Shown here piece by piece: positions 2-23,316 of a stretch of DNA of 64,000 nt. A program made the position numbers and the translations under genes. Under the pieces are notes generated by a model that had not been told where the DNA came from, searched no databases, and worked only from the letters and a program-made list of their open reading frames with translations. Every line of letters begins with the position of its first letter. Positions within the stretch are counted from its first letter, which is position 1. The DNA lies in IMG/VR virus record IMGVR_UViG_3300017917_001996, positions 1-64,000 of that record. One strand, written 5' to 3'.

Positions 2-451
2 GAATACTGCCAAGACAACCTGAACGCTAAGGATCAGATTGAACGCATTGTGAACATTTCTACTATGTTCCGTGAATTCAACTTTGACATGCTGAAGGCT
101 CTTGTTGAAGAAATGAATCGTTACAACGAAACTCCTCAGCAAGCACTTGCTATGCTTAACGCCAAGCCTGAGTTTGATGGTGAGACTAAGTACGAAGTCA
201 AGATCGTCCATGAAGGCCAAGAGATTGACTACAATAGCGAATATCGTGGTAACCCTCTGAGCCCCGACGGTGTCGAGATTGGATTTGATCCGGCTCCTGA
301 TGACGACGAAGCCGATTACATTCACAAGGTCTTCACTGCAAGCACTCTTGTAACTGTTAAGAACGGTCAGTTTGTGTTTGAGGACAAAGGCACTCGTATT
401 ATGCTAACTCGCATCGTTGAGAAGAAGCCCAATTACTGGGATGCCTTTTAA
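2..451 (+). CDS. Partial CDS (5' truncated), possibly the C-terminal part of a phage AAA-family ATPase
   Basis: Frame is open from base 2 (EYCQDNLN...FNFDMLKALVEEMNRY); no Walker motif in the window, so the family call is tentative. Confidence 0.45.
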   Translation, partial: EYCQDNLNAKDQIERIVNISTMFREFNFDMLKALVEEMNRYNETPQQALAMLNAKPEFDGETKYEVKIVHEGQEIDYNSEYRGNPLSPDGVEIGFDPAPDDDEADYIHKVFTASTLVTVKNGQFVFEDKGTRIMLTRIVEKKPNYWDAF

Positions 452-474
452 AAAAGCCCCGAAAGGGGCTTTTT
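450..474. terminator. Bidirectional intrinsic terminator
   Basis: AAAAAAGCCCC-GAAA-GGGGCTTTTT between convergent genes. Confidence 0.9.
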
Positions 475-1228
475 ATTTGAGTACAATATCAAAGATCCAA
501 GCCTCAAAGACTTCAGACCTTGCATAGTCGTAGGGTATCCAGAAGTAACCATTTTCGCCCCAGTCAGGACCAAAACTGTTCTTGGCTAACAGTTGTTTCT
601 TGTCTTGATTGTAGCCAACAAGAAAGACAGCGTGTTCACCATAGAAATCCTCAAATCTATTTTTAGGCATCTCTACAACAGGATTAGTTTTGTCAATTCC
701 AAAGAATTGAGTGTATACACTCATACCGATTACTACTGGTCGATTATTGTTTATGGCTGCAATGATCTCGGGTATACCATATAAACGTCGATAATTTTCA
801 AGTGTGCGTTTCTTAGCATCGGCATAGGCTTCCGGACTAGGACGCACATCAAATTTTTTAATGTCGTAGGGCCAAAGATCTTCTGAGCAGATACCATAAT
901 CAACTATACCTTCAATGGCAGCGCGAATGGTAGTGCCCGCATCTAGTTCTACTAGGTCTTCCTTAAAACGGCCGTTGTAGTAAACAAACAGCGAACTCAA
1001 CTCGGTGAAGTTTTTAGGATAATTACGCCTTAGCATCATTTCATATGCGCCAGCTAGAGCTTGTCCAACACAACTACCTAAAGTTGTTTGATCTTCAACT
1101 CGTGTATCCCATTCCCTCAGGTCCACTACATTTCTAGTAGGAATACGAGCAACCTGGTAAACCCAATCTCTATGATCAGGTCTACTAGGTCTGCATGAAT
1201 GCCTGTTACGGCTGATTAGATTATCCAC
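473..1228 (-). CDS. Papain-like (C1A) cysteine peptidase
   Basis: DQTTLGSCVGQA (oxyanion Q, catalytic C), GEHAV (H), KNSFGPDWGENGYFW (N). Confidence 0.9.
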   Translation of the reverse strand: MDNLISRNRHSCRPSRPDHRDWVYQVARIPTRNVVDLREWDTRVEDQTTLGSCVGQALAGAYEMMLRRNYPKNFTELSSLFVYYNGRFKEDLVELDAGTTIRAAIEGIVDYGICSEDLWPYDIKKFDVRPSPEAYADAKKRTLENYRRLYGIPEIIAAINNNRPVVIGMSVYTQFFGIDKTNPVVEMPKNRFEDFYGEHAVFLVGYNQDKKQLLAKNSFGPDWGENGYFWIPYDYARSEVFEAWIFDIVLK

Positions 1229-1845
1229 CAGCCGGTGCTCCTAAAAACTACGCCAACACTTTGATTGGGTACACTAATGATGTAAGTAGCTTTGCCATCA
1301 ATTAGCTGACCAGCTTGAGGTTGTATAGTAATCTTACCAGAACCTTGGCCGTATTCATCTTTGATTGTGTACACACGACCATTGATGCCTGCAGGCAAGG
1401 TAATAGTTACTGCATTGGCACTAAAAACACCGATATATTCATCATTTAATGCGGCTGTATAACTTGTTGTGGTACCGTAAACATTAATTAAATCAGCACC
1501 ATAACTACTAATGGTAATATTACCGGTAGTTCCTGTTATAGTAATACCTGGGCCAGCTGCCAGACTGGTAACACCAGTGTTATAGATTTCGAATTTAGCA
1601 TTGGGTCCAGACGTAACTACATTGGTCAATGCAATCCCATTACCAGCAGTAGGAGTAACACTGGTAACAACCTGTGCGCCATTGGAAGTTAAATTACCAG
1701 TAACAGTAATCGAATTGAAGGTTACATTGGCATTAGGGTGCAGGTTTTGTGCAACAGATATAACACCATCAATAACATCAATATTGCCGCCTATCTGTAC
1801 AACACCATATTCCAGGGTTGATGCGGCTGAACTTAAATATGACAT
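1216..1845 (-). CDS. Beta-rich structural/fibre-like protein
   Basis: GVTSLAAGPGITIT repeats; C-terminal domain (DEYIGV...VTITLP...LIDG...WWII) is paralogous to the C-terminus of 2193-2804. Confidence 0.6.
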   Translation of the reverse strand: MSYLSSAASTLEYGVVQIGGNIDVIDGVISVAQNLHPNANVTFNSITVTGNLTSNGAQVVTSVTPTAGNGIALTNVVTSGPNAKFEIYNTGVTSLAAGPGITITGTTGNITISSYGADLINVYGTTTSYTAALNDEYIGVFSANAVTITLPAGINGRVYTIKDEYGQGSGKITIQPQAGQLIDGKATYIISVPNQSVGVVFRSTGWWII

Positions 1846-1848
1846 TTA

Positions 1849-2181
1849 TTATGCTCCTGCTGAACCGCAGTAACCGGCTGCGCTTTGGGAACCTGTGTAT
1901 CCCCAACCTTCTTTGTTTTCCATTTCTCTTTGTGCTTGTTTCATACCAGCACGAAATCCTCTGGCAAAGTCATCTTTGGCTGTATCGTATCTGCCAAAGT
2001 CATAGTAATAATCATATAAGTCTGTGTCGTCATAGTCATAGTAATCATAGTCAGGATAATCCCAATACCAATAATGATATGGATGATACCAATAATGTCT
2101 ATTCCAATAATGTCCTGGACGTTGTGGTCCGTGAGGTGCTTGTGGTGCTGCTTGTGGTCTGCGTGGTGGTCTTCTATTCAT
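1849..2181 (-). CDS. Tyr/His/Trp/Asp-rich low-complexity protein
   Basis: RBS AAGGAG upstream; HYWNRHYWYHPYHYWYWDYPDYDYYDY; fills the gap in the operon. Confidence 0.7.
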   Translation of the reverse strand: MNRRPPRRPQAAPQAPHGPQRPGHYWNRHYWYHPYHYWYWDYPDYDYYDYDDTDLYDYYYDFGRYDTAKDDFARGFRAGMKQAQREMENKEGWGYTGSQSAAGYCGSAGA

Positions 2182-2192
2182 GATTTACTCCT

Positions 2193-2804
2193 TTAAATTA
2201 TATGCCATTCGCCGCCGCGACATAACATACTAACTGATTCGTAAGGTACTTCCATAACATAAGAAGTACTACCATCGATAAGGCCACTATTTGCAACCAC
2301 AAGCGTAACCTTACGGTTACCAATTGGCGGGCCCATTTCTATTTTTACAATAATTTGCTGACAATCTTCGCAATCTCCGGGAAGTGTGATAGTAACCGGT
2401 CCAGTACTATTAACACCAATGTAATAATCATCCATCGTAGCACTGTAGTCTTGTGATACCACTCTTGCCGAGCACTTGCAACTACAGTTTCCAGTCGCAC
2501 CAGTAGCTCCGATAGGGCCAGGTTCTCCTTGAGCGCCCGTTGCTCCAGTAGCACCAATCGGTCCTTGAGGTCCTGTAGCTCCGATGCATTCCGGCGGGCA
2601 AGGCGGGGGGTTGGGTCCTGTTGCACCATTTACTCCTTGTTGTAATACTGTTGATGATAATCCCGCAGGAATAAATTGACCGGACACTGTTTGTCTGATC
2701 AACTCAAGATGGTTATGAGTGAGATCATTTCGATTCTTATTAATCTGTGCGATTATTTCGTTGAGCTCAATTAATCTTTGTTCATTGGGATTCATTTTTT
2801 CCAT
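2193..2804 (-). CDS. Short collagen-like protein with Cys motifs and a C-terminal beta domain
   Basis: GATGPQGPIGATGATG repeats flanked by CPPEC and CSCKC. Confidence 0.8.
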   Translation of the reverse strand: MEKMNPNEQRLIELNEIIAQINKNRNDLTHNHLELIRQTVSGQFIPAGLSSTVLQQGVNGATGPNPPPCPPECIGATGPQGPIGATGATGAQGEPGPIGATGATGNCSCKCSARVVSQDYSATMDDYYIGVNSTGPVTITLPGDCEDCQQIIVKIEMGPPIGNRKVTLVVANSGLIDGSTSYVMEVPYESVSMLCRGGEWHII

Positions 2805-3162
2805 CCTTAGAAAAGAATTGGAATAATTTTCCGCTGATAGTTGATTTTTCTTCTTTAACCGGTTCGGGCTCGGTTACTTCAATGTTGGGCTCTTGTTTAA
2901 TTTCTTCTATAGCCTGCTCGGCAGACTCTTTTATTGTGTCTTGCTCGTTGTCACAATCAACAACGGTGTTTTCTACTTTTTCTATATTAATATTAATATC
3001 TGTGTCGCTATCTGAGGTTTTGACTCCAGCAAACAGCGTCTGTTTAAAATCATCAAGGTTAAAAGGCTTTCCGCCTATGCTTGGTAACTCGCCAGTGAGT
3101 CTATACCTCGAAATTACATGACTTAAAGCTATTAATTCGTACTCGCGGGGATCCATTGCCAT
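2782..3162 (-). CDS. Hypothetical acidic protein
   Basis: RBS GAGG; N-terminus (DPREYELIALSHVI) resembles the N-terminus of 2193-2804 (NPNEQRLIELNEII). Confidence 0.6.
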   Translation of the reverse strand: MAMDPREYELIALSHVISRYRLTGELPSIGGKPFNLDDFKQTLFAGVKTSDSDTDININIEKVENTVVDCDNEQDTIKESAEQAIEEIKQEPNIEVTEPEPVKEEKSTISGKLFQFFSKDGKNESQ

Positions 3163-3176
3163 ACCTCAACATCCTT

Positions 3177-3210
3177 TTAAAATGGCGAACCCTTGTGAGG
3201 TTCGCCAGTT
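3177..3210 (-). terminator. Intrinsic terminator after the 3230-3853 gene
   Basis: TGGCGAACC/GGTTCGCCA stem followed by a T-run on the minus strand. Confidence 0.75.
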
Positions 3211-3229
3211 TTACTACTCAACGTTGAAA

Positions 3230-3853
3230 TTAACGAACGTTGTTGCTGGTGCTGGTTTGACCAACGCCGGCCATTGTGCCAAAGTTAACCATACCTTGGC
3301 GAGTCTCTTGTAGTTGACTCTGGAAGGCATTTAATTGGCTAGTTAGAGCAGCCCACTGACTGTTGTCAGCGTGACGGTGCCAGTGACGTCCATCATCAAG
3401 AGCAGCAACTAGTTCAGTGTTGCGCTCAATTAGACGACGACCATAGTCATCTTCACGTAGGCGATTAATTAGAGCAACAGTTTTCTCGTTTCCCGAATCG
3501 ATCTTGTCACTTAGATAAGTTGTCTGCTTGGCTAGTTCAACTTGTGTCTTTAGTGCATTGATTTCTGCATCCTTGCTTGCACCCAAGAATCCAGCAACTA
3601 CTTGTTGCTGTTGTGCTACGATCTGAGCACGGATATCGGCTAGGTCACGACCAGTGTCAAAGAAACGACTGTCGATGCCGCGGGCTGTATCGCTTACTCT
3701 TTGATTGATATCAAAACGTGCGTCTTTGATAGCGCCTTGTGTGTTATAGTCGCCTTTTAGACCTTCTTTAACGATTTCGTTAGTGTGCTCCGATGCTTCA
3801 CGACGGATGTCGCTGTGTTGACCGGCTAACATCATTGTATCTACTTCTGCCAT
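3230..3853 (-). CDS. Long helical/coiled-coil protein of unknown function
   Basis: Strong RBS AAGGAG, its own terminator, heptad-like helical composition. Confidence 0.75.
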   Translation of the reverse strand: MAEVDTMMLAGQHSDIRREASEHTNEIVKEGLKGDYNTQGAIKDARFDINQRVSDTARGIDSRFFDTGRDLADIRAQIVAQQQQVVAGFLGASKDAEINALKTQVELAKQTTYLSDKIDSGNEKTVALINRLREDDYGRRLIERNTELVAALDDGRHWHRHADNSQWAALTSQLNAFQSQLQETRQGMVNFGTMAGVGQTSTSNNVR

Positions 3854-3958
3854 TTTATTCTCCTTTATAAGTTATAACGGCTTGTACAGGAATACTTCCT
3901 GCAATGTACCCTGAATGTTTGATCAGGTGTTATAATTACTTAGGTAAAAATTGTGGTC

Positions 3959-3986
3959 AAAAAAATAGGCCTTGGTCTAAGGCCTA
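3959..3986 (-). terminator. Terminator of the luxR-family gene, overlapping a candidate operator
   Basis: TAGGCCTT-GGTCT-AAGGCCTA followed by a T-run on the minus strand. Confidence 0.65.
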
Positions 3987-4006
3987 CTTCAGTGTATGTG
4001 CTATAA

Positions 4007-4699
4007 TTACTTCTTGGCAAACACAGCCAGTTGTGTTCTGTTCTTAACACCGTATTTCTTAAAAATGTGACCAAGATGAAGTTTAACTGTACTTTCACTA
4101 ATGTTCAGTGAACGTGCAATAACTTTGTTACTGGATCCTCGTTCAAGTACAATATTGAGAATTTGATTCTGACGAGGTGTAAGTTTAATTTCTTTCAAAG
4201 AACCCAATTCGGGTTTAGATTTTGAACCTGGTAATTGATCGATAATGTGTTTAGGCCAGTACGGAATGCCTGCCCATTGAGCAAGTACACCTTTTTCGCA
4301 TTCATCCCAACCATAGTCTCGAGAGTTTGGAATTATACCAATGATTCCACTTTTTTGTAGATCTTTTATTAGGGCAACATCAGCGCCACTGAAAATAGAA
4401 ACAGAAACGGAAATTTCATAGTCTAATTCAATTAGCTTGGAAAGAGTTCTTACCATGTTAACTACCTCAATGGCTGTTGTGTTATCTAGTTCGGCTTGAT
4501 GTATTGAAATGCTTTTAACTTTTTTAGACTTTAAATGTTCTGTTAAAGAATCCCAATTTGAGCAAAAGATAATTTCTTTTACATCGGATTTTTTATACAG
4601 CTCATCTAAATCATCTCTTATCGGTTCGATAAACCGATCAAATGTCTCATCGGTGAATGCTTTACTAAAAAATAAATGTACAGTTTTTTCAGTTGTCAT
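4007..4699 (-). CDS. LuxR/NarL-family (GerE HTH) transcription regulator with a degenerate receiver-like N-terminus
   Basis: LTPRQNQIL...SNKVIARSLNISESTVKLHLGHIFKKYGVKNRTQL; start moved to ATG 4699, which has a GGAGAG RBS. Confidence 0.9.
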   Translation of the reverse strand: MTTEKTVHLFFSKAFTDETFDRFIEPIRDDLDELYKKSDVKEIIFCSNWDSLTEHLKSKKVKSISIHQAELDNTTAIEVVNMVRTLSKLIELDYEISVSVSIFSGADVALIKDLQKSGIIGIIPNSRDYGWDECEKGVLAQWAGIPYWPKHIIDQLPGSKSKPELGSLKEIKLTPRQNQILNIVLERGSSNKVIARSLNISESTVKLHLGHIFKKYGVKNRTQLAVFAKK

Positions 4700-4770
4700 T
4701 TGTTCTCTCCACGGTGTATACAAATACTTACGTTTGTCTACACATCTGTTTAACATACCATGGTACGCCT

Positions 4771-4787
4771 TAGACATGAGTCTAGGT
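4771..4787. promoter_or_regulatory. Palindromic candidate operator TAGAC-N4-GTCTA(GGT), with further copies at 5125-5141 and 3966-3979
   Basis: Three copies flank the luxR gene, all intergenic or at gene ends. Confidence 0.5.
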
Positions 4788-4878
4788 CTTCCTTCTATTA
4801 CTACGACTATTATAAATAAAAGACCCGATTGATATCAAATTAAACAGTAGTACTTTTAACACTGGACTTACATCTCTT

Positions 4879-5127
4879 ATGAGCAATCTCACCAATTATT
4901 TTAACAACATTTGCTATAAACCTCTTTACAACATAGGCGACCGCGTCTACGGCCGCTGGAACAAAATTCCTTTCGTTGGTACAGTAGGTAACGATACCTT
5001 GATTAACGAACAAGAGGGTCCTCGCATCAGCATACATCTTGACTTGCCTATACGTGTCAATGATTACAATCATACAATAATATTTGTCAAGCATCGAGAC
5101 ATTAAACGTCTTGTTGAATTTAACTAG
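4879..5127 (+). CDS. Small hypothetical protein (SH3/KOW-like)
   Basis: YNIGDRVYGRWNKIPFVGTV pattern. Confidence 0.55.
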   Translation: MSNLTNYFNNICYKPLYNIGDRVYGRWNKIPFVGTVGNDTLINEQEGPRISIHLDLPIRVNDYNHTIIFVKHRDIKRLVEFN

Positions 5128-5171
5128 ACTTTAGTCTAGGTTTTTGCCGTGTAGAAGTTTTAAATATCTGC

Positions 5172-6077
5172 ATGTGCATTATCATTGGCAAATATTTTGA
5201 CGACCTAGGCTGGGTTGCAGTTAAAAATCGAGACCGCAATTACATTCCTGAAATTTCTTTTCGTAAAAAAACTGCCAGCGGAGTTGAAGTCTTATACTTC
5301 TGGGATGATATAACACAGTATTGCGAAGGTTTTAATTCAGCCGGGGTAGGTATTCTCAGTGCTAGCTTGATGGTCTTAGACGACGAAAAAGAGATAGAGA
5401 AGCGCACTCGCACACCGAGTCGCGATGGTGCTAGAATAAAGAAAGCCTTGATGCTGCCTAATGTCAAGGCAGCGGCCATGCAATTGATCAATGATAAACT
5501 AACAGGAAATACCTTGGTGTTCAACAAGGATCATATGTTTCTAATCGAAGCTGCTCAAAATAACGGAAGGTATCGTTACAAGGTACGCGAGATTCCCCGA
5601 GACCAAACGGTAGTTAGGACCAATCACGGAATCTGGTTACCTTGGGCTGGCTATCAACGCGGTGTAGATCAAGCCGAGACTCTAAGTAGGATCAGTTCAG
5701 AAAGTAGAAAACTGATTGCCGATCAGGTAACCGAGCAATCACAGGACCCAGAAGATATCTTGGATGGACTAACCTTAGACTATACCAGCAACGGTCAATT
5801 AAATGCACTACGCACTACAACTGAAAAAAAGAAAATGCGTACCACAAGTCAAATCATGATCATACCCAAAGAGAGAACCATGTATGTACGCCCGGTGCAG
5901 AGCAATATGATTTTTAATTTTTGGGAATTGAACAAGCCCAATCAGCAGACCTGGATCGAAATTCTAAGCAATCGAGTTTTATACATGAACCTTAAGGACA
6001 TTGACCCTGGTAACGATCCACCATTTGATCACAGCCTAAGTCACGACTTGGACGAGCAAGAAGTCCAAATTACTTGA
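5172..6077 (+). CDS. N-terminal nucleophile (Ntn) hydrolase-like protein
   Basis: MC start, KNRD motif and RTNH resemble NRDE/C45-type Ntn hydrolases. Confidence 0.6.
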   Translation: MCIIIGKYFDDLGWVAVKNRDRNYIPEISFRKKTASGVEVLYFWDDITQYCEGFNSAGVGILSASLMVLDDEKEIEKRTRTPSRDGARIKKALMLPNVKAAAMQLINDKLTGNTLVFNKDHMFLIEAAQNNGRYRYKVREIPRDQTVVRTNHGIWLPWAGYQRGVDQAETLSRISSESRKLIADQVTEQSQDPEDILDGLTLDYTSNGQLNALRTTTEKKKMRTTSQIMIIPKERTMYVRPVQSNMIFNFWELNKPNQQTWIEILSNRVLYMNLKDIDPGNDPPFDHSLSHDLDEQEVQIT

Positions 6078-6102
6078 TTTAACCGTTCTGTGCGTATATA
6101 AT
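6074..6102 (+). promoter_or_regulatory. Sigma70-like promoter
   Basis: TTGATT-N17-TATAAT with TG upstream. Confidence 0.65.
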
Positions 6103-6152
6103 TAGTGGAACAATACCACTAAGTATTACAAAGTGCTTTACACAGAGGTTTT

Positions 6153-6509
6153 ATGGGTTCAGGAAATTATTGCTTCACTTGTTTAAATTGCGGTCGACAA
6201 AATCCAGTTAAGAGCAGTGGCATTATATCTAAGTATTGTAATAACAAATGCCAGGCAGAACACCGCAGTCGTTCTCTTGTAAAAGAATGGAAAGACAACG
6301 AAACTACAACCGCTTGGCGTCAAGTTCCCGAATATGTCAAAAAATACTTGATATCTAGTCGAGGCCATAAATGTGAAATCTGTGGCGGCACTGAGTGGCA
6401 AGGAGAAGAGATTCCGTTAGTTGTAGATCATTGGGATCGTAACACTCATAATAACGAAGAGTCAAATTTAGCAATTATATGTCCTAACTGTAGGTCACAA
6501 CGTAAGTAA
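6153..6509 (+). CDS. HNH endonuclease with Zn-finger
   Basis: CxxC pairs; VDHWDRNTHNNEESNLAIICPNC. Confidence 0.8.
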   Translation: MGSGNYCFTCLNCGRQNPVKSSGIISKYCNNKCQAEHRSRSLVKEWKDNETTTAWRQVPEYVKKYLISSRGHKCEICGGTEWQGEEIPLVVDHWDRNTHNNEESNLAIICPNCRSQRK

Positions 6510-6537
6510 TTCATTTAACACACAAGGAGAAACACAA

Positions 6538-7083
6538 ATGAAAACAATCGGCGATAAAATTACAAGTTTTGCAGTTACTGGCGTCAAGCCTGGCGCACTT
6601 TCTCCAGAGGGTGCGTTCGAAACTATTACTGACAAAAGCTTCGAAGGAAAATGGAAAGTTATTGTCTACTATCCTAAGGACTTCACTTTCGTATGTCCTA
6701 CTGAGATTGTTGCTTATGACAAGCTCAATGGTGACTTTGCTGACCGTGATGCAGTTCTATTGATCGGCAGCACAGACAATGAGTTCTGCAAGCTGGCATG
6801 GCGTAACGCACACGAAGATCTAAAGAAGACAAATTCTTGGAGCTTCGCTGATGTTGCTCGGGACGAAAACAGCCTAGCCGACCAACTTGGTATCTTCTAC
6901 GGCCCTGCTGGTGCTGCACTTCGCGCTACATTCATTGTTGACCCTGATAACGTTATTCAGCACGTTACAGTAAACAACTTAGACGTTGGTCGTAACCCAG
7001 ACGAAACATTGCGTGTTCTAGACGCACTGCAAACTGGCGAACTATGCCCATGCAGCCGTCCTGTCGGTGGTGAGACACTGTAA
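6538..7083 (+). CDS. ahpC: Peroxiredoxin AhpC
   Basis: YYPKDFTFVCPTE, GRNPDE, GELCPC. Confidence 0.95.
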   Translation: MKTIGDKITSFAVTGVKPGALSPEGAFETITDKSFEGKWKVIVYYPKDFTFVCPTEIVAYDKLNGDFADRDAVLLIGSTDNEFCKLAWRNAHEDLKKTNSWSFADVARDENSLADQLGIFYGPAGAALRATFIVDPDNVIQHVTVNNLDVGRNPDETLRVLDALQTGELCPCSRPVGGETL

Positions 7084-7430
7084 TGCACTATCACGCACAC
7101 ATCTACTGGCAAAATGAAGCCCAGAGGTTTGAAGCGTTACACCTAAGACAGCCCCTTCAAGAATTGGGCTGTCAATTGGGTAGCATACACGACGAACCGA
7201 TTGGTCCTCATCCGTCGCCTATGTATCAAGTAAACTACAACAGCAACATTGCTGACGAAGTTGAAGAATTGTTATATAAGGCTAAGTTGCATATCTTATT
7301 ACACGAAGATACCGGTAATGATGTGCGTAACCATACTGAAGGCGTAAGATGGATTGGAAGGCCTCTAACACTGAATATCGATTGGTTAAGGAATTATGCT
7401 AAAGGAGTAAAAAATGACACATTGGGTTGA
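7083..7430 (+). CDS. DOPA 4,5-dioxygenase family protein
   Basis: YHAHIY, IGPHP, LLHEDTG..NHT..WIGRPL.L motifs. Confidence 0.8.
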   Translation: MHYHAHIYWQNEAQRFEALHLRQPLQELGCQLGSIHDEPIGPHPSPMYQVNYNSNIADEVEELLYKAKLHILLHEDTGNDVRNHTEGVRWIGRPLTLNIDWLRNYAKGVKNDTLG

Positions 7431-7932
7431 TGCATTAAAAGAAAACAGCATACCTGATTATGCCAAGGATACCAAGCTAAACATGGACGCTGTAATCAAG
7501 CGTAGCTCGCTGCCTGCAGAAGAAGCAGAAGCCGTTGCACTAGCAGCCGCATTTGCCACAGGTAACAGCAAACTATGGACTTGGATGGAAAGTCAGATTG
7601 CTAACAAGACAGAGACACAGGCTGCACTAACAGCAGCAGCACTAATGGCACAAAACAACGTATGGTATCCTTACGTTGAAATGGCCGACGATGAGCAGCT
7701 CAAAGGTTTGCCTGCACAGTTGCGTATGAATGCCATTGCCACACACGGCGGCACAACCAAAGAGCGCTTTGAGGCATACAGTTTAGCCGCTAGCATTGTT
7801 GGTAAATGCCATTTCTGTGTAAAGGCACACTACGAAGGCCTAAAGAAAATGGGCTATACAGTTGAGCAATTACGTGACATTGGACGTATTTCCGCAGTGA
7901 TTACTAGTGTATCAAAAGTGGTAGCAAACTAA
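7414..7932 (+). CDS. ahpD: Alkyl hydroperoxide reductase AhpD
   Basis: PDYAKDTKLN, MAQNNVWY, LRMN, CHFCVKAH. Confidence 0.93.
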   Translation: MTHWVDALKENSIPDYAKDTKLNMDAVIKRSSLPAEEAEAVALAAAFATGNSKLWTWMESQIANKTETQAALTAAALMAQNNVWYPYVEMADDEQLKGLPAQLRMNAIATHGGTTKERFEAYSLAASIVGKCHFCVKAHYEGLKKMGYTVEQLRDIGRISAVITSVSKVVAN

Positions 7933-8348
7933 TGATTGAATGTATTGTATTAGGTGATTCTATTGCTGTAGGTACACACCTTCAACGCCATGAGTGTGTG
8001 TCCTATAGCAAAGGCGGTATTAATACTTGGCAATGGAACAAGATGTATAGCGACAAAGACCTAACTGCCGGTACAGTTATTATTAGTCTTGGCACCAACG
8101 ACCACAAAGGTGTAAAAACCGAAAAAGAGTTGTTAGCTATGCGATCTCGGGTCAAAGCAGCCCGAGTGTTTTGGATTATGCCTCCTTGTAATGATAAGTT
8201 TTGTAAGCAGGACGTCAATGACATTGTCAAGATGATTGCCGAAGCAAACGGAGATATAATTATCGGAACCAATCGTGTGCAAGCAGATGCTATTCACCCA
8301 AGTTGGGCCGGGTATAGAGAATTAGCAACACAAACAAAAGCACCGTAA
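7932..8348 (+). CDS. SGNH/GDSL hydrolase
   Basis: GDSIAVG, SLGTND, DAIHPSWAGY. Confidence 0.85.
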   Translation: MIECIVLGDSIAVGTHLQRHECVSYSKGGINTWQWNKMYSDKDLTAGTVIISLGTNDHKGVKTEKELLAMRSRVKAARVFWIMPPCNDKFCKQDVNDIVKMIAEANGDIIIGTNRVQADAIHPSWAGYRELATQTKAP

Positions 8349-8359
8349 GGTGCTTTTTT
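8336..8359 (+). terminator. Intrinsic terminator
   Basis: AAAAGCACC-GTAA-GGTGCTTTTTT. Confidence 0.9.
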
Positions 8360-8455
8360 ATTGGGTTTTTAAGTTATAGTAGCAGTTTGTTTTTTAGCCC
8401 GAAATGTTAAATAAGTTTATACTGTACTAAAGTATAGGTTGCAGGAGGAAAATAC

Positions 8456-8929
8456 GTGAAGAAAATAGTTACGATTTTGCTTTTTGTGCCCGTGCTAGCG
8501 CAAGCTGAACTAGTTCAACAATTCAAAAATCCTGCTTTTAGCGGCATTGGTTGGTCAAGCCATGCACTAACGGTAGACAGTATCGAAAAAAGTCGTAGAG
8601 ACACTATAGAAGCAGACAAAAAAGCCGCTATTGCCAAAGCCGAAGCAGATTTATTAAATACGCCGTTAAATAGGTTCATGAGCCTATTCCAGAGTCAAGT
8701 TTATGCACAACTTGCTACTCAATTAAGTAATAACTTATTCCAAAACAAATGTGCAGCCGCAGATGGCGGTAGTATTCCTGGTTGTGTAAATCCAACTACA
8801 GGAACATTTAATTTGGATGGAAATACCGTCACTTGGACAAAAGCCAATGACAAAGTTACATTAACTGTAGTTGATGCTAAAGGGTCAGTGACTACAGTCG
8901 TGGTACCAATTGCAAGTTTTGGATTCTAA
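8456..8929 (+). CDS. csgF: Curli assembly protein CsgF
   Basis: Signal peptide then AELVQQFKNPAFSG (CsgF N-terminal motif); adjacent to csgG. Confidence 0.8.
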   Translation: MKKIVTILLFVPVLAQAELVQQFKNPAFSGIGWSSHALTVDSIEKSRRDTIEADKKAAIAKAEADLLNTPLNRFMSLFQSQVYAQLATQLSNNLFQNKCAAADGGSIPGCVNPTTGTFNLDGNTVTWTKANDKVTLTVVDAKGSVTTVVVPIASFGF

Positions 8930-21120: not shown

Positions 21121-23316
21121 ATGGCCAGTAGCATTGACAGTTCAAGAATTGACGCGACCTTTCCTCGCGCTGGCCAAAATAATGATAGTCAAGGATTCAG
21201 AGATAACTTTGCTAACATTAAGGCGGCGATCAGCACCACTAATAATGAAATAACTGAACTACAAGAAAAAGCAGTTCTAAAAAGTCCCCTAACTGGCAGT
21301 ACCGGTGTTGACAACAACATGAACTGGCAAGACATAACTCGCCTACAGTTAAAAGCCTTTAGTGAAACGTATGTAGATGTCGGAGTAGTGTCAGACTATT
21401 ATGAAGTAAATTATGTCGATGGCACACTACAGCGTTTAAAACTTACACAGGATTTATTGCTTGATTTTTCGAACTTTCCTCCGGTTGGACAGTTTGGACG
21501 TTTAAAAATTTGGTTTGCCGTAGACAATAAGAACTACAGAGTTATACTCCCAGAATCGGTAATTTACGGAACAAACAATTTACAGATTGTTAACCAAAGA
21601 ATCATTTTCCCTGAAGTTGGCGATTTTTTACTTGAAATAGGATCAGTGGACCATGGCATGACGTTCTGGTTCATTGATTTTGCCAACCTCGGAGGATCAG
21701 GCGGTGGAAGGCTAGGAGCAACTGGTGCCACCGGTCCTATAGGTCCAACTGGTCCACAGGGTCCAACTGGTCAATTTGGCGGCTTAACACTAGCTTATCG
21801 TTACAGAAACATAACTGCTAATGCATGGCCCGGTGATGGTTACATTGCATTTAACGAAGAAAACATTTCTACTGCTACAGAAATGTATGTTAGTGACAAA
21901 GACATTGATGCAAACATTGTTGAGATGTTTTTAAGAACTATCGACGACAGCACAAATCCAATTAAAGGTCACTTTAAGATTACTCGTAAACTAGACGAAA
22001 GCGCCTATGCTGTCTTTACCATAAATGCAATTAACCAAGAGAACTCAAATTACTTTGCTATATCGTGTAGCTATGTAGATGGATACTCTACCATTGACAA
22101 TACCGACGAAGTATTTGTTACTTTTGCTAGAACAGGCGACGTAGGCCCTATAGGGTCAACTGGTGCTACTGGTCCACAAGGTATCCCGGGAACAGCAGTT
22201 TATCGTGGTGCCACCGGAGCAACAGGTCCTCTTGGTGCTACCGGATTGACTGGGCCTGTTGGACCTGTTGGTGCCACTGGCGTACAAGGTATTCCAGGGC
22301 CAATGGGTTTTGAAGGATATACAGGTAGTCGAGGCTTTACAGGTAGCCAAGGTGAAACAGGTTACGTTGGCAGTCAAGGACTAGATGGTGCTGCCGCAGC
22401 AGTTGGATATGTTGGCAGCGAAGGCGCTACAGGACCGTACGGATACACTGGTAGCCAGGGTATCCCCGGAGTTGCTGCATGGCGTGGCGCAACTGGTGCT
22501 ACAGGTATACGCGGTTCAACTGGTCCAATTGGTGCCACTGGCCCACAAGGTGCACCTGGCGGCTATACTGGTAGTCAAGGCGACTTTGGTTATACTGGTA
22601 GCATTGGCACAGGATATACCGGTAGCGTAGGCGAAAGTTCCTTTACATGGGGACCAACACCGCCCGAGGATCCAGCAATAGGTGACCGCTGGTACGATAG
22701 TATTACCGGAGCAGAAGTAGTCTGGACCAGCGACGGGAATACACAACAATGGGTTGAAATTTCAGCATCAGGCTTCTTGGGCAGACCGGGTTATACTGGT
22801 AGTCGTGGTGTATTAGGATTTACAGGTAGTCAAGGCAATACAGGTTTTACTGGCCCAATTGGTTATACTGGTAGCCAAGGCATTCCGGGTCAATATGCTG
22901 CTTTAGGCTATACAGGTAGCCAAGGTAGTTTCCCTAATAGGGTAGTTGTTACCGGTATAACACCTTTATTACCCGCTGACACCAATGATACAATTAACAT
23001 CACCGGTTTCAAAGGCTATATGTTATATAAAGTCACTGTAATTGGTGCACCTGCATGGGTGCAGATCTATAACAACGATTCTAATAGAATTGCCGATGCA
23101 CAAAGGCCAAATTGGACAGCACCTCAACCAAATATAGGCTTAATAACCGAGGTAACAACAACACAAGCAAACCAAACAGTGTCGTTTACACCTGCGCTAT
23201 TTGGTTACAACGATGAAACTCCAGTTACCACTAATATTCCATTGCGTGTAACAAACAGAGGTTCGTCGCCTGCAACTATTACAGTTGCACTAACTTTAGT
23301 TAAAGCAGAAGCATAA
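21121..23316 (+). CDS. Collagen-like tail fibre protein
   Basis: NDSQGFRDNF N-terminus; long GATG/GYTGSQG Gly-X-Y repeats. Confidence 0.8.
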   Translation: MASSIDSSRIDATFPRAGQNNDSQGFRDNFANIKAAISTTNNEITELQEKAVLKSPLTGSTGVDNNMNWQDITRLQLKAFSETYVDVGVVSDYYEVNYVDGTLQRLKLTQDLLLDFSNFPPVGQFGRLKIWFAVDNKNYRVILPESVIYGTNNLQIVNQRIIFPEVGDFLLEIGSVDHGMTFWFIDFANLGGSGGGRLGATGATGPIGPTGPQGPTGQFGGLTLAYRYRNITANAWPGDGYIAFNEENISTATEMYVSDKDIDANIVEMFLRTIDDSTNPIKGHFKITRKLDESAYAVFTINAINQENSNYFAISCSYVDGYSTIDNTDEVFVTFARTGDVGPIGSTGATGPQGIPGTAVYRGATGATGPLGATGLTGPVGPVGATGVQGIPGPMGFEGYTGSRGFTGSQGETGYVGSQGLDGAAAAVGYVGSEGATGPYGYTGSQGIPGVAAWRGATGATGIRGSTGPIGATGPQGAPGGYTGSQGDFGYTGSIGTGYTGSVGESSFTWGPTPPEDPAIGDRWYDSITGAEVVWTSDGNTQQWVEISASGFLGRPGYTGSRGVLGFTGSQGNTGFTGPIGYTGSQGIPGQYAALGYTGSQGSFPNRVVVTGITPLLPADTNDTINITGFKGYMLYKVTVIGAPAWVQIYNNDSNRIADAQRPNWTAPQPNIGLITEVTTTQANQTVSFTPALFGYNDETPVTTNIPLRVTNRGSSPATITVALTLVKAEA

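What the first reader, a model, noticed from the sequence alone, without database searches (positions are those of the whole stretch)
473..4699. LuxR-headed minus-strand operon resembling an extracellular coat or matrix module
Seen: against the main transcription direction lie luxR, a coiled-coil protein with its own terminator, an acidic protein, a Cys-flanked collagen-like protein, a Tyr/His/Trp-rich protein, a beta-rich paralogue of the collagen C-terminal domain and a papain-like protease. I see no signal peptides. Known: collagen-like, Cys-rich and Tyr-rich proteins are typical of cross-linked spore coat and exosporium layers. Inference: this may be a regulated self-assembling structure (virion coat, occlusion-like body or fibre) matured by the protease. 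A LuxR-type regulator is unusual in a T4-like phage.
Basis: inference. Interest (0 to 1): 0.7.

Follow-up and report, generated by a model that had tools for sequence, protein, structure and literature searches.

The report
Conserved jumbo-phage accessory fibre gene cassette
A seven-gene block read against its neighbours in an uncultured pond jumbo phage is a real module shared by many such phages; it most likely builds short fibre-like appendages from an abundant coiled-coil protein and two small fibre proteins, under its own regulator, but its function is untested.

Summary
Seven minus-strand genes lie at 473-4777: a LuxR-type regulator, a coiled-coil protein followed by a hairpin, an acidic protein, a Cys-knotted collagen-like protein, a Tyr/His/Trp-rich protein, a beta-rich protein sharing the collagen protein's C-terminal domain, and a C1 peptidase. 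None has a signal peptide.

The block is conserved in about 40 non-redundant IMG/VR jumbo-phage loci. These include lineages whose DNA polymerase is only about 30% identical to the window's.

The invariant core is the coiled-coil protein plus the collagen fibre. The peptidase (18 of 33 loci) and LuxR (17 of 33) are optional.

The shared C-terminal domain has the T4 gp9/gp10 / CBA120 TSP4 XD fold (Z 12.6). Agrobacterium phage Atu_ph07 carries the same domain in a protein found in its virions.

The coiled-coil protein ends in a near-invariant 25-residue tail, which also ends small Tyr-rich proteins in other loci.

The cassette lacks the genome's T4-type late promoter. LuxR presence co-occurs with a TAAGTA box and a leader hairpin upstream of the coiled-coil gene.

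Best reading: a self-contained, horizontally exchanged accessory fibre kit. The spore-coat or occlusion-body reading stays an analogy. Maturation by the protease is not general. No experiment bears on function.

The parts
4809..4838 (-). Sigma-70-like promoter for luxR (TTGATA, 18 nt, TATAAT; 11 of 12 matches). Its -10 hexamer overlaps a T4-type late motif TATAAATA on the + strand at 4811-4818, which faces the + strand gene starting at 4879.
   Evidence: scan; sequence. The scan found no more promoter-like sites than in shuffled sequence (16 against 14.4), so this site stands on its near-consensus match and its position only.
4007..4777 (-). LuxR/FixJ-class regulator. The C-terminal GerE helix-turn-helix covers residues 199-254. 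The N-terminal domain is receiver-like. The start may instead be Met27 at 4699.
   Evidence: Pfam GerE 3.9e-17. NarL and VpsT DNA-binding domains in the PDB match at 2.6e-10 and 2.5e-8. The N-domain resembles VpsT-like REC by features (score 0.89) and NarL-type response regulators by structure (TM 0.53-0.63). NCBIfam's best hit is CsgD at 60 bits against a cut-off of 250; FimZ aligns over nearly the full length at 4e-7.
3937..3942 (-). TAAGTA box upstream of cc207. It is conserved in the loci that have LuxR and is a candidate promoter or operator element.
   Evidence: present in 15 of 16 LuxR loci against 1 of 21 LuxR-less loci. It is not a genome-wide motif.
3872..3935 (-). 5' leader hairpin of cc207. 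It starts a few bases after the TAAGTA box and leaves the ribosome site free.
   Evidence: MFE -18.5 with z -2.7 here, and mean z -3.2 over 15 loci. The closing helix changes sequence between loci (TTATAAC/GTTATAA here, TATGAGAG/CTCTCATA elsewhere).
3230..3853 (-). cc207: an elongated coiled-coil protein, the presumed bulk product. It has a strong ribosome site (AAAGGAG).
   Evidence: AF2 gives helix 6-153 at mean pLDDT 76. The family has at least 1231 metagenome members, all unnamed. It matches no PHROG or Pfam family.
3233..3307 (-). The 'NFG tail': the last 25 residues of cc207 (ETRQGMVNFGTMAGVGQTSTSNNVR), nearly invariant across the family.
   Evidence: Alignment A1. Pairwise identity is 87% in the tail against 36% in the N-terminal part. 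Synonymous codons are saturated at the invariant residues. The same motif ends Tyr-rich small ORFs in other loci.
3183..3207 (-). Hairpin plus T-run after cc207: an attenuator or partial terminator.
   Evidence: An equivalent hairpin with a T-rich tail follows the cc207 homologue in 33 of 41 unique sequences.
2782..3162 (-). acid126: an acidic protein (pI 4.4). Its N-terminal helix region weakly resembles the N-terminal domain of the collagen-like family. It has a Glu/Pro-rich tail.
   Evidence: hhalign against A3 gives E 3.1e-4 at 39% probability. Positional equivalents exist in L039 and L046.
2193..2804 (-). coll203: a short collagen-like fibre. Order of parts: N-terminal helix, Cys knot, Gly-X-Y run (about 2484-2639), Cys knot, C-terminal beta domain (2196-2477). 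The likely start is 2795.
   Evidence: Pfam Collagen in 31 of 32 orthologues. The Cys residues on both sides of the collagen run are nearly invariant. The C-terminal domain is homologous to that of beta209.
1849..2181 (-). YHW110: a low-complexity protein with a basic Pro-rich N-terminus and a Tyr/Trp/His/Asp-rich body. It has a strong ribosome site and no NFG tail.
   Evidence: Positional and compositional equivalents are L038:9906-10292 and L044:9934-10308.
1216..1845 (-). beta209: a short beta-structured fibre. It has a conserved N-terminus (MSYLS..YGVV.IG), repeat shaft units (NTGV..L.AG.GI), and a C-terminal gp9/gp10 (XD)-type domain at 1219-1494.
   Evidence: Alignment A2. In the AF2 model residues 120-209 have pLDDT above 90. 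VIA-align gives Z 12.6 to CBA120 TSP4, 10.5 to the Pa223 capsid spike, 10.4 to T4 gp9 and 9.8 to T4 gp10.
473..1228 (-). C1 (papain-family) cysteine peptidase of the bacterial xylellain type. It has no signal peptide and no long prodomain.
   Evidence: Pfam Peptidase_C1 at 55 bits against a cut-off of 20.7. PDB 3OIS matches at 1.7e-28. H199 and N217 are invariant; Gln47 and Cys53 are kept in at least 90% of sequences.
450..475 (.). Bidirectional intrinsic terminator (GCCCC-GAAA-GGGGC between an A-run and a T-run). It lies between the convergent peptidase gene and the + strand gene at 50-451.
   Evidence: Sequence read.

Best explanation
**What it is.** The cassette is a self-contained accessory 'fibre kit' that jumbo phages exchange horizontally.

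**Shown**
- The coiled-coil protein cc207 has the sequence signals of a product made in excess: a strong ribosome site, a 5' leader hairpin, and an attenuator hairpin directly after its stop codon.
- Two small proteins, one with a disulfide-knotted collagen stalk and one with a beta-repeat shaft, end in the same gp9/gp10 (XD)-type beta-sandwich.
- The last 25 residues of cc207 are under extreme protein-level constraint. The same peptide ends unrelated Tyr-rich proteins in sister loci.
- In half of the loci the block carries its own LuxR/FixJ-class regulator, together with a TAAGTA box.

**Inferred**
- In other phages the gp9/gp10 (XD)-type sandwich joins fibres and spikes to each other, to the baseplate or to the capsid (recalled knowledge).
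- The parts assemble after synthesis in the cytoplasm into short composite fibres or 'hairs' on or around the virion.
- The conserved tail acts as a common oligomerisation or docking tag, working like a foldon or a plug. It brings the coiled-coil and Tyr-rich proteins into one assembly.
- The conserved C-terminal domains of the two fibres are anchoring ends rather than receptor-binding ends.
- The Cys knots, and possibly the Tyr-rich proteins, harden the assembly once the cell lyses into oxidising water.
- The C1 peptidase is an optional trimming or cargo enzyme.
- The regulator is made early from a host-type promoter and switches on the TAAGTA promoter independently of the general late programme.
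For: **Synteny**
- The order cc207, collagen fibre, (beta209), (peptidase) recurs in about 40 non-redundant loci.
- The block is usually inverted relative to the small flanking genes.

**Lineage breadth**
- The cassette occurs in phages whose DNA polymerase is 65-67% identical to the window's, and in others where it is only about 30% identical.
- Against the window's proteins, the distant-lineage loci L055 and L060 still give 45-47% identity for the peptidase and 39% for cc207; the collagen protein's C-terminal domain is 64% in L055, and coll203 over its full length is 40% in L060.

**Fibre nature**
- The beta209 C-terminal domain aligns to CBA120 TSP4 residues 78-175 at Z 12.6, rmsd 1.8 A over 90 residues.
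- It also aligns to the Pa223 capsid spike, KP1 baseplate proteins, and T4 gp9 and gp10.
- The same domain is widespread at the ends of collagen-repeat and fibre proteins of uncultured phages.
- It occurs inside a 913-aa collagen-repeat ORF of this genome.
- It occurs in Atu_ph07 gp286. That protein lies next to tail fibre gp288 and was detected in purified virions with 8 peptides and 33% coverage (PMC6102473 Table S5).
- Relatives Atu_ph07 and CBB bear hair-like whiskers whose genes are unknown.

**cc207 as the bulk product**
- It has a strong ribosome site.
- A leader hairpin occurs in 15 loci, mean z -3.2.
- A hairpin with a T-run follows the gene in 33 of 41 sequences.

**The tail**
- Pairwise identity is 87% in the tail against 36% in the N-terminal part.
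- Synonymous codons are saturated at invariant residues.
- A tail profile hits Tyr-rich ORFs with E-values down to 2.7e-7 among 6165 ORFs.

**Anchoring rather than receptor-binding ends**
- The C-terminal domains are the most conserved parts of both fibres: 62% and 71%.

**Regulation**
- None of the genome's late motifs lies in the cassette, although ATAAATA is enriched 13-fold upstream of 25 other genes.
- LuxR and the TAAGTA box co-occur in 15 of 16 loci against 1 of 21.
- In the L007/L009 clade the same genes sit behind a T4-type late promoter, which points to late timing.
Against: - There is no proteomic, transcript or imaging evidence for this phage or any carrier of cc207. The source is a pond metagenome and no RNA run holds the sequence.
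- No cultured phage encodes cc207 or beta209.
- The one complex prediction, cc207 tail against a coll203 trimer plus the peptidase, gave no answer. No partner of the tail is identified.
- Locus L030 keeps the canonical tail but lacks the invariant loop of the coll203 C-terminal domain. That domain is therefore unlikely to be the tail's universal socket.
- A module shared by lineages with 30%-identical polymerases would need a docking site on very different virions. This fits a free-standing assembly at least as well as a virion-bound one.
- The window's cassette lacks the late promoter that precedes many genes of this genome, including large ORFs that look structural.
- The hendecad periodicity of cc207 is weak, with power about 1.1.
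Confidence: 0.4

Rival explanations
1. One reading: the products form a free-standing cross-linked matrix, coat or occlusion-like body, not attached to the virion by a specific site. It assembles from the coiled-coil protein, the collagen fibres and the Tyr-rich proteins. It hardens by disulfides and perhaps dityrosine after lysis, and embeds or shields progeny.
For: - The module is self-contained and moves between lineages with about 30%-identical polymerases.
- The window's cassette has no late promoter.
- It has its own regulator, whose nearest named relatives control fibre or matrix genes: CsgD, FimZ, and VpsT-like REC.
- cc207 has the signals of an abundant product.
- The conserved Gly/Asn/Gln/Ser-rich tail is shared with Tyr/Arg-rich low-complexity proteins. 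That fits a homotypic self-assembly motif.
- The Cys knots are conserved.
- There are no signal peptides, so any oxidative cross-linking must wait for lysis.
Against: - No homology to any coat, exosporium, polyhedrin or matrix family was found. A single weak Baculo_PEP_C hit in one of 36 members is coiled-coil noise.
- The two fibres carry a domain typical of virion fibres and spikes, and that domain is found in a virion protein of Atu_ph07.
- No oxidase or peroxidase lies in the cassette.
- The host is probably Gram-negative, though the hint is weak: the neighbouring peroxiredoxin is closest to Burkholderiales. No spore context exists.
- The regulator scores far below the CsgD cut-off, 60 bits against 250.
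Confidence: 0.2
2. A host-surface-directed soluble complex released at lysis. The C1 peptidase degrades a proteinaceous layer of neighbouring host cells, such as an S-layer, fimbriae or biofilm protein. The fibres and the coiled coil act as adhesins or carriers, easing infection by progeny.
For: - The catalytic residues of the peptidase are conserved under long divergence.
- The peptidase family is frequent in jumbo-phage contigs. It also occurs as a lone gene in Burkholderia phage FLC9, a 595-kb uncultured phage and the Lak phages.
- Its nearest solved relative is a bacterial C1 peptidase, 3OIS.
- NCBIfam places the collagen stretch nearest to bacterial collagen-like adhesins (Scl, Lcl), far below their cut-offs.
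Against: - The peptidase is absent from 15 of 33 loci that keep the core pair, so it cannot be the point of the module.
- One orthologue (L032) has Ser in place of the catalytic Cys.
- The fibre C-termini are the most conserved parts, unlike host-binding tips.
- No substrate is known.
Confidence: 0.12
3. Ordinary baseplate or tail-fibre parts that merely happen to be encoded away from the structural region. cc207 would be a fibritin-like whisker or fibre chaperone.
For: - The C-terminal domain has the gp9/gp10 (XD) fold.
- By my recollection of the T4 map, fibritin is encoded beside genes 9-12, which resembles a coiled-coil gene followed by genes with gp9/gp10-type domains.
- The L007/L009 clade uses a T4-type late promoter.
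- Atu_ph07 gp286 is a virion protein next to a tail fibre gene.
Against: - cc207 matches no fibritin, chaperone or any PHROG or Pfam family.
- The cassette is patchy among related phages. It is absent from Phosso, Atu_ph07, a Vibrio jumbo phage and a Yersinia jumbo phage and from all 50,697 GenBank phage records. Core tail parts would not be.
- Its content varies from locus to locus.
- It carries a regulator, a peptidase and low-complexity proteins that tail modules lack.
- It appears to have crossed between distant lineages.
Confidence: 0.15
4. A chance neighbourhood of unrelated genes with no common function.
For: None beyond the lack of functional data.
Against: - The order and orientation are conserved in about 40 non-redundant loci and two distant lineages.
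- The genes overlap or abut in the window, and the hairpin after cc207 is conserved across loci.
- Domains and motifs are shared among members.
Confidence: 0.01

Closest known systems
T4 gp9/gp10 domains and the XD domains of CBA120 tailspike TSP4 (PDB 7REJ, 7RFO, 1QEX, 5IV5)
   Same: The C-terminal 90 residues of beta209, and by homology of coll203, superpose on TSP4 residues 78-175 at Z 12.6 and rmsd 1.8 A. They superpose on T4 gp9 residues 67-163 at Z 10.4 and on gp10 residues 49-146 at Z 9.8. By my recollection of the literature, these domains serve to join fibres and spikes to one another and to the baseplate.
   Different: Sequence identity is only 16-23%, and no Pfam T4_gp9_10_N match was found. 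Here the domain sits at the extreme C-terminus of very small proteins (about 200 aa). It follows a collagen stalk or a short beta shaft, inside a separately regulated cassette.
Agrobacterium phage Atu_ph07 gp286 (AUZ95058.1), and the 'hairy whiskers' of Atu_ph07 and Pectobacterium phage CBB
   Same: gp286 ends in the same domain (profile E 4.1e-7; BFVD hit). It was found in purified virions. These relatives carry hair-like appendages whose genes have not been identified.
   Different: Atu_ph07, Phosso and the Rak2-like phages tested lack cc207 and lack the cassette. gp286 lies beside an annotated tail fibre gene, not in an inverted island. I mapped gp286 to AUZ95058.1 from gene order and mass (38.7 kDa, 367 aa).
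SPP1 gp12, a small collagen-like auxiliary capsid protein (Zairi et al. 2014, cited in PMC13212656)
   Same: Both are small phage-encoded collagen-like proteins that are accessory rather than essential. gp12 binds the capsid as a trimer (from the cited title and my recollection).
   Different: gp12 is far smaller and has no Cys knots and no gp9/gp10-type domain. No sequence comparison was made here.
T4 fibritin (wac) with its C-terminal foldon
   Same: Both are elongated coiled coils whose short C-terminal peptide is far more conserved than the body. In T4, fibritin is encoded beside genes with gp9/gp10 domains (my recollection).
   Different: There is no detectable sequence relationship. The tail is Gly/Asn/Gln/Ser-rich and is predicted disordered in the monomer model. 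The same tail also ends Tyr-rich proteins, which has no parallel for the foldon.
CsgD / VpsT / FimZ-type atypical response regulators (LuxR/FixJ class)
   Same: Both have a GerE helix-turn-helix plus a receiver-like N-domain. CsgD is the best NCBIfam hit and FimZ aligns almost end to end. The N-domain has VpsT-like REC features. Those regulators switch on fibre or matrix operons.
   Different: Scores are far below the family cut-offs (60 bits against 250). The VpsT c-di-GMP motif was not seen. Several sister loci carry only a 72-86-aa stand-alone helix-turn-helix. DNA binding is untested.
Xylellain-type bacterial C1 peptidases (PDB 3OIS)
   Same: It is the best solved relative at E 1.7e-28 over residues 29-246. 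The catalytic Gln/Cys/His/Asn are in place.
   Different: The gene is phage-encoded. It has only a short N-terminal extension of about 30 residues and no signal peptide. Its substrate is unknown.
   Same: The inventory is similar: a collagen-like protein with a C-terminal beta domain, Cys-rich knots and Tyr-rich small proteins. There is also a GerE-family regulator and a cysteine protease.
   Different: None of these families is matched. The C-terminal domain has a different fold family. The likely host is Gram-negative (weak hint).

Membership tests
LuxR/FixJ (NarL) class transcription regulators | C-terminal GerE-type helix-turn-helix above the Pfam threshold | tested here: met
   PF00196 scores 62.1 bits against a cut-off of 23.5, E 3.9e-17, over residues 199-254. 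The NarL DNA-binding domain matches at 2.6e-10.
LuxR/FixJ (NarL) class transcription regulators | N-terminal receiver (CheY-like) domain with a phospho-acceptor Asp | tested here: inconclusive
   The fold is receiver-like (TM 0.53-0.63 to NarL-type regulators; VpsT-like REC by features, 0.89). Pfam Response_reg is not matched. By eye, the strands where the acidic pocket and acceptor Asp should sit read VHLFFS and ISIHQ. No residue-level alignment was made.
Quorum-sensing LuxR receptors | N-terminal autoinducer-binding domain | tested here: not met
   No Autoind_bind match in Pfam at E up to 0.1. RhlR, SdiA and CviR match only through the helix-turn-helix.
CsgD (NCBIfam NF007505 equivalog) | Score above the curated cut-off | tested here: not met
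   60 bits against a cut-off of 250, matching residues 166-255 only.
Collagen triple-helix repeat proteins (PF01391) | Uninterrupted Gly-X-Y run above the Pfam threshold | tested here: met
   27.6 bits against a cut-off of 27.2 for the window protein. 31 of 32 orthologues match, best 1e-13. Trimer formation was not shown.
BclA/BclB exosporium glycoproteins | C-terminal BclA/BclB-type (C1q/TNF-like) domain | tested here: not met
   No such Pfam match in 32 orthologues at E up to 1. The C-terminal domain superposes on gp9/gp10/XD domains. One giant-virus protein annotated with a BclB C-terminal domain appears among the BFVD fold hits (rank 40) and was not followed up.
T4 gp9/gp10-like (XD) fibre-joining domains | The fold of the domain | tested here: met
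   Z 12.6, 10.4 and 9.8 with rmsd 1.7-2.0 A over 85-90 residues. The model region has pLDDT above 90.
T4 gp9/gp10-like (XD) fibre-joining domains | Location in the baseplate or a tailspike complex, binding other fibres | not testable with these tools
   The only indirect support is the homologous domain in virion protein gp286 of Atu_ph07.
Papain family (C1) cysteine peptidases | Pfam match and the catalytic Gln, Cys, His, Asn | tested here: met
   PF00112 scores 55 bits against a cut-off of 20.7. H199 and N217 are invariant and Q47 and C53 are at least 90% conserved in 19 sequences.
Papain family (C1) cysteine peptidases | Secretory signal and I29-type inhibitory prodomain of classical C1A enzymes | tested here: not met
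   No I29 match and no hydrophobic N-terminus. Only about 30 residues precede the mature-type VDLR motif.
T4 fibritin | Sequence relationship to fibritin or its foldon | tested here: not met
   No PHROG or Pfam match for 36 family members.
Anti-phage defence or counter-defence systems (PADLOC) | Any component model matched | tested here: not met
   Only the helix-turn-helix of the regulator matches CARF/CasR-associated HTH models. The other six proteins give nothing.

The most novel reading that the evidence does not exclude
The near-invariant 25-residue C-terminal peptide (consensus ..RQGMVNFGTMAGVGQSSTSNNVR) is a new portable self-assembly or targeting tag. It drives a coiled-coil protein and Tyr-rich low-complexity proteins into one higher-order polymer. 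Together with the Cys-knotted collagen fibres, that polymer forms an extra-virion or virion-coating fibrous layer. The layer hardens oxidatively after lysis, and a phage-borne CsgD/VpsT-like pseudo-response regulator switches it on. In effect this would be a phage-encoded, regulated 'matrix' programme.
Probability: 0.15. Interest if true: 0.8.

Novelty: new variant of a known kind. Interest (0 to 1): 0.55.

Why it matters
Jumbo phages of this broad group carry hair-like appendages whose genes nobody has pinned down (PMC5259590, PMC6102473). Their genomes are mostly unnamed genes.

This work defines a widespread module, with at least 1231 coiled-coil homologues in metagenomes. It has a clear core, clear optional parts, a candidate regulator-operator pair and a candidate portable assembly tag. 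That turns a block of 'hypothetical proteins' into specific bench tests.

If the tail is a general assembly or display tag, it would also be a useful tool. If the cassette proves to be a regulated non-virion structure, it would be a new kind of phage-made material.

If it proves to be plain accessory fibres, the finding is a modest addition to known phage fibre diversity.

Tried and rejected
**Searches that found nothing**
- Nucleotide and protein searches of 50,697 GenBank phage records found nothing for the cassette DNA, beta209 or cc207. Only the peptidase has distant lone homologues there. The one inspected, in Burkholderia phage FLC9, has a neighbourhood of hypothetical proteins only.
- A scan of 185,579 prokaryote genomes found no cc207 relative, so no prophage or host clue came from it.
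- No RNA sequencing run holds the sequence. Only the source pond metagenome does.
- Sequence search of the PDB gave only chance-level hits (E 0.28 or worse) for cc207 and beta209.
- Pfam gave nothing for ten accessory ORFs of sister loci.
- PADLOC gave nothing relevant.
- Four literature searches found no description of this cassette.

**Tests without a usable result**
- The complex prediction set the cc207 tail (residues 120-207) against a coll203 trimer plus the peptidase. It is not used as evidence either way.
- The accessory family exemplified by L008:7369-7989 is not related to the collagen protein's N-domain (E 0.15).
- The 368-aa ORF at 23329-24435, the same size as Atu_ph07 gp286, does not carry the shared C-terminal domain.

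**Ideas rejected**
- TAAGTA as a genome-wide promoter was rejected. Its counts are below expectation and only 11 genes have it upstream.
- My first automatic test for terminators after cc207 undercounted (4 of 40). It read the global fold rather than the local hairpin. A direct stem-plus-T-run scan replaced it.
- My first flag of late motifs in several LuxR-less loci did not hold within 200 nt of the start, except in L007, L009 and marginally L050.
- I considered a profile search with the tail alone in the 1.84-billion-protein library and dropped it. A 25-35-position profile cannot reach significance there except on the cc207 family itself.

Full report
**1. Source.** The window is the first 64 kb of a 250,289-bp IMG/VR virus record, about 71% complete by CheckV, assembled from a pond metagenome.
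- Its DNA polymerase is T4-type (PHROG 262).
- The polymerase is 51% identical to Sinorhizobium phage Phosso, 46% to Agrobacterium phage Atu_ph07 and about 43% to Rak2-like and other jumbo phages.
- The motif ATAAATA, the core of the T4 late promoter TATAAATA, is enriched 13-fold in the 100 nt upstream of genes. It precedes 25 genes, mostly 25-40 nt before the start codon.
- 'T4-like' is therefore fair for replication and late transcription. The phage itself is an uncultured jumbo phage.

| Gene | Coordinates | Key evidence |
|---|---|---|
| luxR | 4007-4777 | Pfam GerE 3.9e-17 |
| cc207 | 3230-3853 | one helix 6-153, two short helices, low-confidence tail |
| acid126 | 2782-3162 | pI 4.4 |
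| coll203 | 2193-2804 | Pfam Collagen 2.4e-6; 8 Cys |
| YHW110 | 1849-2181 | 16% Tyr |
| beta209 | 1216-1845 | C-terminus homologous to coll203 |
| C1 peptidase | 473-1228 | Pfam Peptidase_C1 1.5e-14 |

- In coll203, Cys residues bracket the Gly-X-Y run. These Cys are nearly invariant in 32 orthologues.
- The beta209 and coll203 C-termini are homologous: 39% identity, E 6e-13; profile E 4.6e-20.
- No protein has a membrane-type or signal-type hydrophobic stretch.
- Two corrections apply. The luxR ORF runs to 4777, though Met27 at 4699 may be the real start. The invariant Met of the collagen family puts the start of coll203 at 2795.
- Most genes have AGGAG-type ribosome sites. The genes from acid126 to the peptidase abut or overlap. 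A bidirectional terminator closes the block at 450-475.

**3. Conservation.** Two scans of IMG/VR with beta209 and cc207 returned 26 and 49 loci.
- tblastn of all cassette proteins on these loci shows the same order and strand nearly everywhere: (luxR), cc207, collagen fibre, (beta209), (peptidase).
- Component counts among 33 non-redundant loci with enough flank:

| Component | Loci (of 33) |
|---|---|
| cc207 | 32 |
| collagen / C-terminal-domain fibre | 31 |
| beta209 | 20 |
| C1 peptidase | 18 |
| LuxR | 17 |
| small tail-bearing ORF | 17 |

- The loci were retrieved with cc207 or beta209, so those two counts are biased upward. The pairing of cc207 with the fibre is not.
- In four of five loci mapped gene by gene, the block is inverted relative to the small flanking genes.
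- Carriers include phages with polymerases 65-67% identical to the window's. They also include two complete 250-258-kb genomes with terminal repeats whose polymerase is only about 30% identical.
- In those distant genomes' loci (L055, L060) the peptidase is 45-47% and cc207 39% identical to the window's proteins; the collagen protein's C-terminal domain is 64% in L055, and coll203 over its full length is 40% in L060. I read this as movement of the block between lineages. No tree was built.
- The cc207 family has at least 1231 members in metagenomes, none named.
- It has none in GenBank phages.
- It has none in 185,579 prokaryote genomes.
- It has none in Phosso, Atu_ph07, a Vibrio jumbo phage or a Yersinia jumbo phage.

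**4. The fibres.** The AF2 model of beta209 is confident only for residues 120-209, with pLDDT above 90.
- VIA-align matches for that domain:

| Target | Z | rmsd / residues |
|---|---|---|
| CBA120 TSP4 residues 78-175 | 12.6 | 1.8 A over 90 |
| Acinetobacter phage tailspike | 11.5 | 1.7 A over 83 |
| Klebsiella phage KP1 baseplate proteins | 11.3 | 1.8-1.9 A over 88-91 |
| Pa223 capsid spike | 10.5 | 2.5 A over 90 |
| T4 gp9 | 10.4 | 1.9 A over 85 |
| T4 gp10 | 9.8 | 2.0 A over 87 |

- Foldseek agrees.
- In AFDB, the ESM Atlas and BFVD the same domain ends many fibre, minor-tail and collagen-repeat proteins of uncultured phages.
- Upstream of the domain, beta209 has a conserved N-terminus and repeated NTGV..AG.GI units. 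Some orthologues duplicate a unit.
- coll203 has an N-terminal helix, a Cys knot, a collagen run of variable length and a second Cys knot.
- The same domain lies inside a 913-aa collagen-repeat ORF of this genome, at 167137-167451, E 8e-7.
- It also ends Atu_ph07 gp286 (E 4.1e-7). gp286 sits beside tail fibre gp288 and was detected in virions.
- Atu_ph07 and CBB carry hair-like whiskers, and their authors could not assign the genes.
- The C-terminal domains are the best-conserved parts of both fibres: 62% and 71%, against 35% for the coll203 N-domain and 51% for the beta209 shaft. Receptor-binding tips usually vary most, so I take these domains as anchoring ends. This is inference.

**5. The coiled-coil protein and its tail.** The N-terminal half of the family varies in length by insertion of SDIRRE-type repeats of about 11 residues. 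A few long members hit the apolipoprotein Pfam family.
- The last 25 residues are almost invariant: N190, F191, G192, T193, G196, Q199, N204 and V206 in all 36 sequences.
- Pairwise identity is 87% there against 36% at the N-terminus.
- Synonymous codons at these residues are thoroughly mixed. Gly192, for example, uses GGC 15, GGA 14, GGT 7 and GGG 1. The constraint is therefore on the peptide, not on the DNA or RNA.
- A profile of the tail finds small Tyr-rich ORFs of about two dozen loci, with E-values down to 2.7e-7 among 6165 ORFs.
- These ORFs lie between the two fibre genes, or just after the peptidase gene.
- The tail is therefore a portable module on two unrelated bodies.
- In this genome only cc207 has it. 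YHW110 belongs to a second Tyr-rich type without the tail.
- What the tail binds is unknown, and the only complex prediction gave no answer.
- L030 keeps the tail but lacks the invariant loop of the coll203 domain. That argues against that loop as a universal socket and leaves self-association as a live option.

**6. Expression signals.**
- luxR has a near-consensus sigma-70-type promoter at 4809-4838.
- Upstream of cc207, loci with LuxR share a TAAGTA box (3937-3942 here). A leader hairpin follows it, and its closing helix changes sequence while keeping pairing (mean z -3.2 in 15 loci).
- LuxR and the box co-occur in 15 of 16 loci against 1 of 21 (Fisher 2.6e-8). The loci are related, so this is not an independent-sample probability.
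- LuxR-less clades use other elements. About ten loci have CAGACGA/TCGTCTG repeats with a TGGCATTATGTCA box near -73. L007 and L009 have a T4-type TATAAATA at -62 and -87.
- A hairpin with a T-rich tail follows cc207 in 33 of 41 sequences. This should make cc207 much more abundant than the downstream products, as in operons that place a major subunit gene first.
- None of the 25 ATAAATA-preceded genes of this genome is in the cassette.

**7. The regulator.**
- The C-terminus is a GerE helix-turn-helix.
- The N-domain has a receiver-like fold.
- NCBIfam's best hits are CsgD, ErdR and NarL, and FimZ aligns nearly end to end. All are far below their cut-offs.
- There is no autoinducer-binding domain.
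- Three sister loci have only a 72-86-aa helix-turn-helix protein.

**8. The peptidase.**
- It is a true C1 enzyme, closest to PDB 3OIS (E 1.7e-28).
- Its catalytic residues are conserved.
- It has a large metagenomic family on jumbo-phage-sized contigs.
- It is optional in the cassette, and one orthologue has Ser in place of the catalytic Cys.

**9. Weighing.**
- The fold, the Atu_ph07 virion protein and the late promoter in one clade favour virion-type fibres.
- Four facts favour an autonomous assembly: the self-contained and mobile nature of the block, its private regulation, the abundant coiled-coil subunit, and the tail shared with low-complexity proteins.
- I put the virion-associated accessory fibre kit first (0.4).
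- Ordinary tail parts follow (0.15), then a host-directed protease complex (0.12).
- The remaining probability covers functions not imagined here.
- The spore-coat likeness is an analogy of composition. No coat family is matched. The only host hint is the neighbouring peroxiredoxin, which is about 70% identical to those of Burkholderiales.

**10. Limits.**
- There is no expression, proteomic or imaging evidence.
- Two structure models were available, and only one domain is confident.
- Oligomeric states are inferred.
- The hendecad signal in cc207 is weak.
- The link of acid126 to the collagen N-domain is weak (E 3.1e-4 at 39% probability).
- I mapped gp286 to AUZ95058.1 from gene order and size.

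Noticed in passing
whole genome G000; in the window e.g. upstream of 16979, 19125, 43706, 57881, 61390: A T4-type late promoter core, ATAAATA (often TATAAATA), is enriched 13-fold upstream of genes. It precedes 25 genes at about -25 to -40. This gives a ready way to sort this phage's genes into late and non-late.
   Followed up: partly
window 4809-4838: Back-to-back promoters. The -10 hexamer of the sigma-70-like luxR promoter (minus strand) overlaps TATAAATA on the + strand at 4811-4818. That motif lies 61 nt before the 82-aa + strand gene at 4879. The two could exclude each other.
   Followed up: no
window 3872-3942 and 15 sister loci: A TAAGTA box is followed within a few bases by a leader hairpin. 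The hairpin's closing helix covaries between loci, and the ribosome site stays single-stranded. It looks like a 5' stabiliser or a regulatory leader. No covariance model was built.
   Followed up: partly
L012, L051, L063, L071 and relatives, about 70-130 nt upstream of the cc207 homologue: LuxR-less loci share inverted CAGACGA / TCGTCTG repeats and a TGGCATTATGTCA box near -73. This is probably a second, unrelated control system for the same cassette.
   Followed up: no
L010:5291-6043: In one locus the cc207 position is occupied by a 250-aa Gly/Asn-rich protein. The fibres, peptidase and two LuxR-type genes remain. The bulk subunit seems replaceable.
   Followed up: no
L007 and L009, about 2650-8460: This is an expanded version of the cassette behind a T4-type late promoter. 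It has two cc207-like paralogues with a variant tail (..NTGT..TNIG), a Tyr-rich tail-bearing ORF and five to six small fibre genes. It has no peptidase.
   Followed up: partly
L032:10154-10918: This peptidase orthologue has Ser where the catalytic Cys should be (GTSVG instead of GSCVG).
   Followed up: no
genome 149-178 kb and 249-250 kb (outside the window); window 21121-23316 and 23329-24435: There are many large ORFs with GYTGSxG-type collagen-like repeats, up to 1516 aa. One runs off the end of the record. The 731-aa ORF in the window matches tail-fibre PHROGs. Collagen-like repeats are a general building material of this phage.
   Followed up: no
window 6538-7083: This is a peroxiredoxin-like gene, named by eye from its sequence and not scanned against Pfam. 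It lies next to the cassette here and in several sister loci at 72-87% identity. Its closest cellular relatives are Burkholderiales at about 70%. The 88% hit sits on a 3-kb contig of a 'Fischerella' MAG and is probably phage DNA binned by mistake.
   Followed up: partly
window 50-451: This 133-aa ORF matches only the C-terminal part (positions 219-303 of 363) of a PHROG ATPase family. It starts 50 nt from the end of the record, so the gene is probably cut by the record boundary.
   Followed up: no
G003 172184-176276; Atu_ph07 211877-214846: The DNA polymerase is split into two ORFs in a sister genome, with about 1.4 kb between the pieces, and in Atu_ph07. It is a single ORF in the window. An inserted element is likely.
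   Followed up: no
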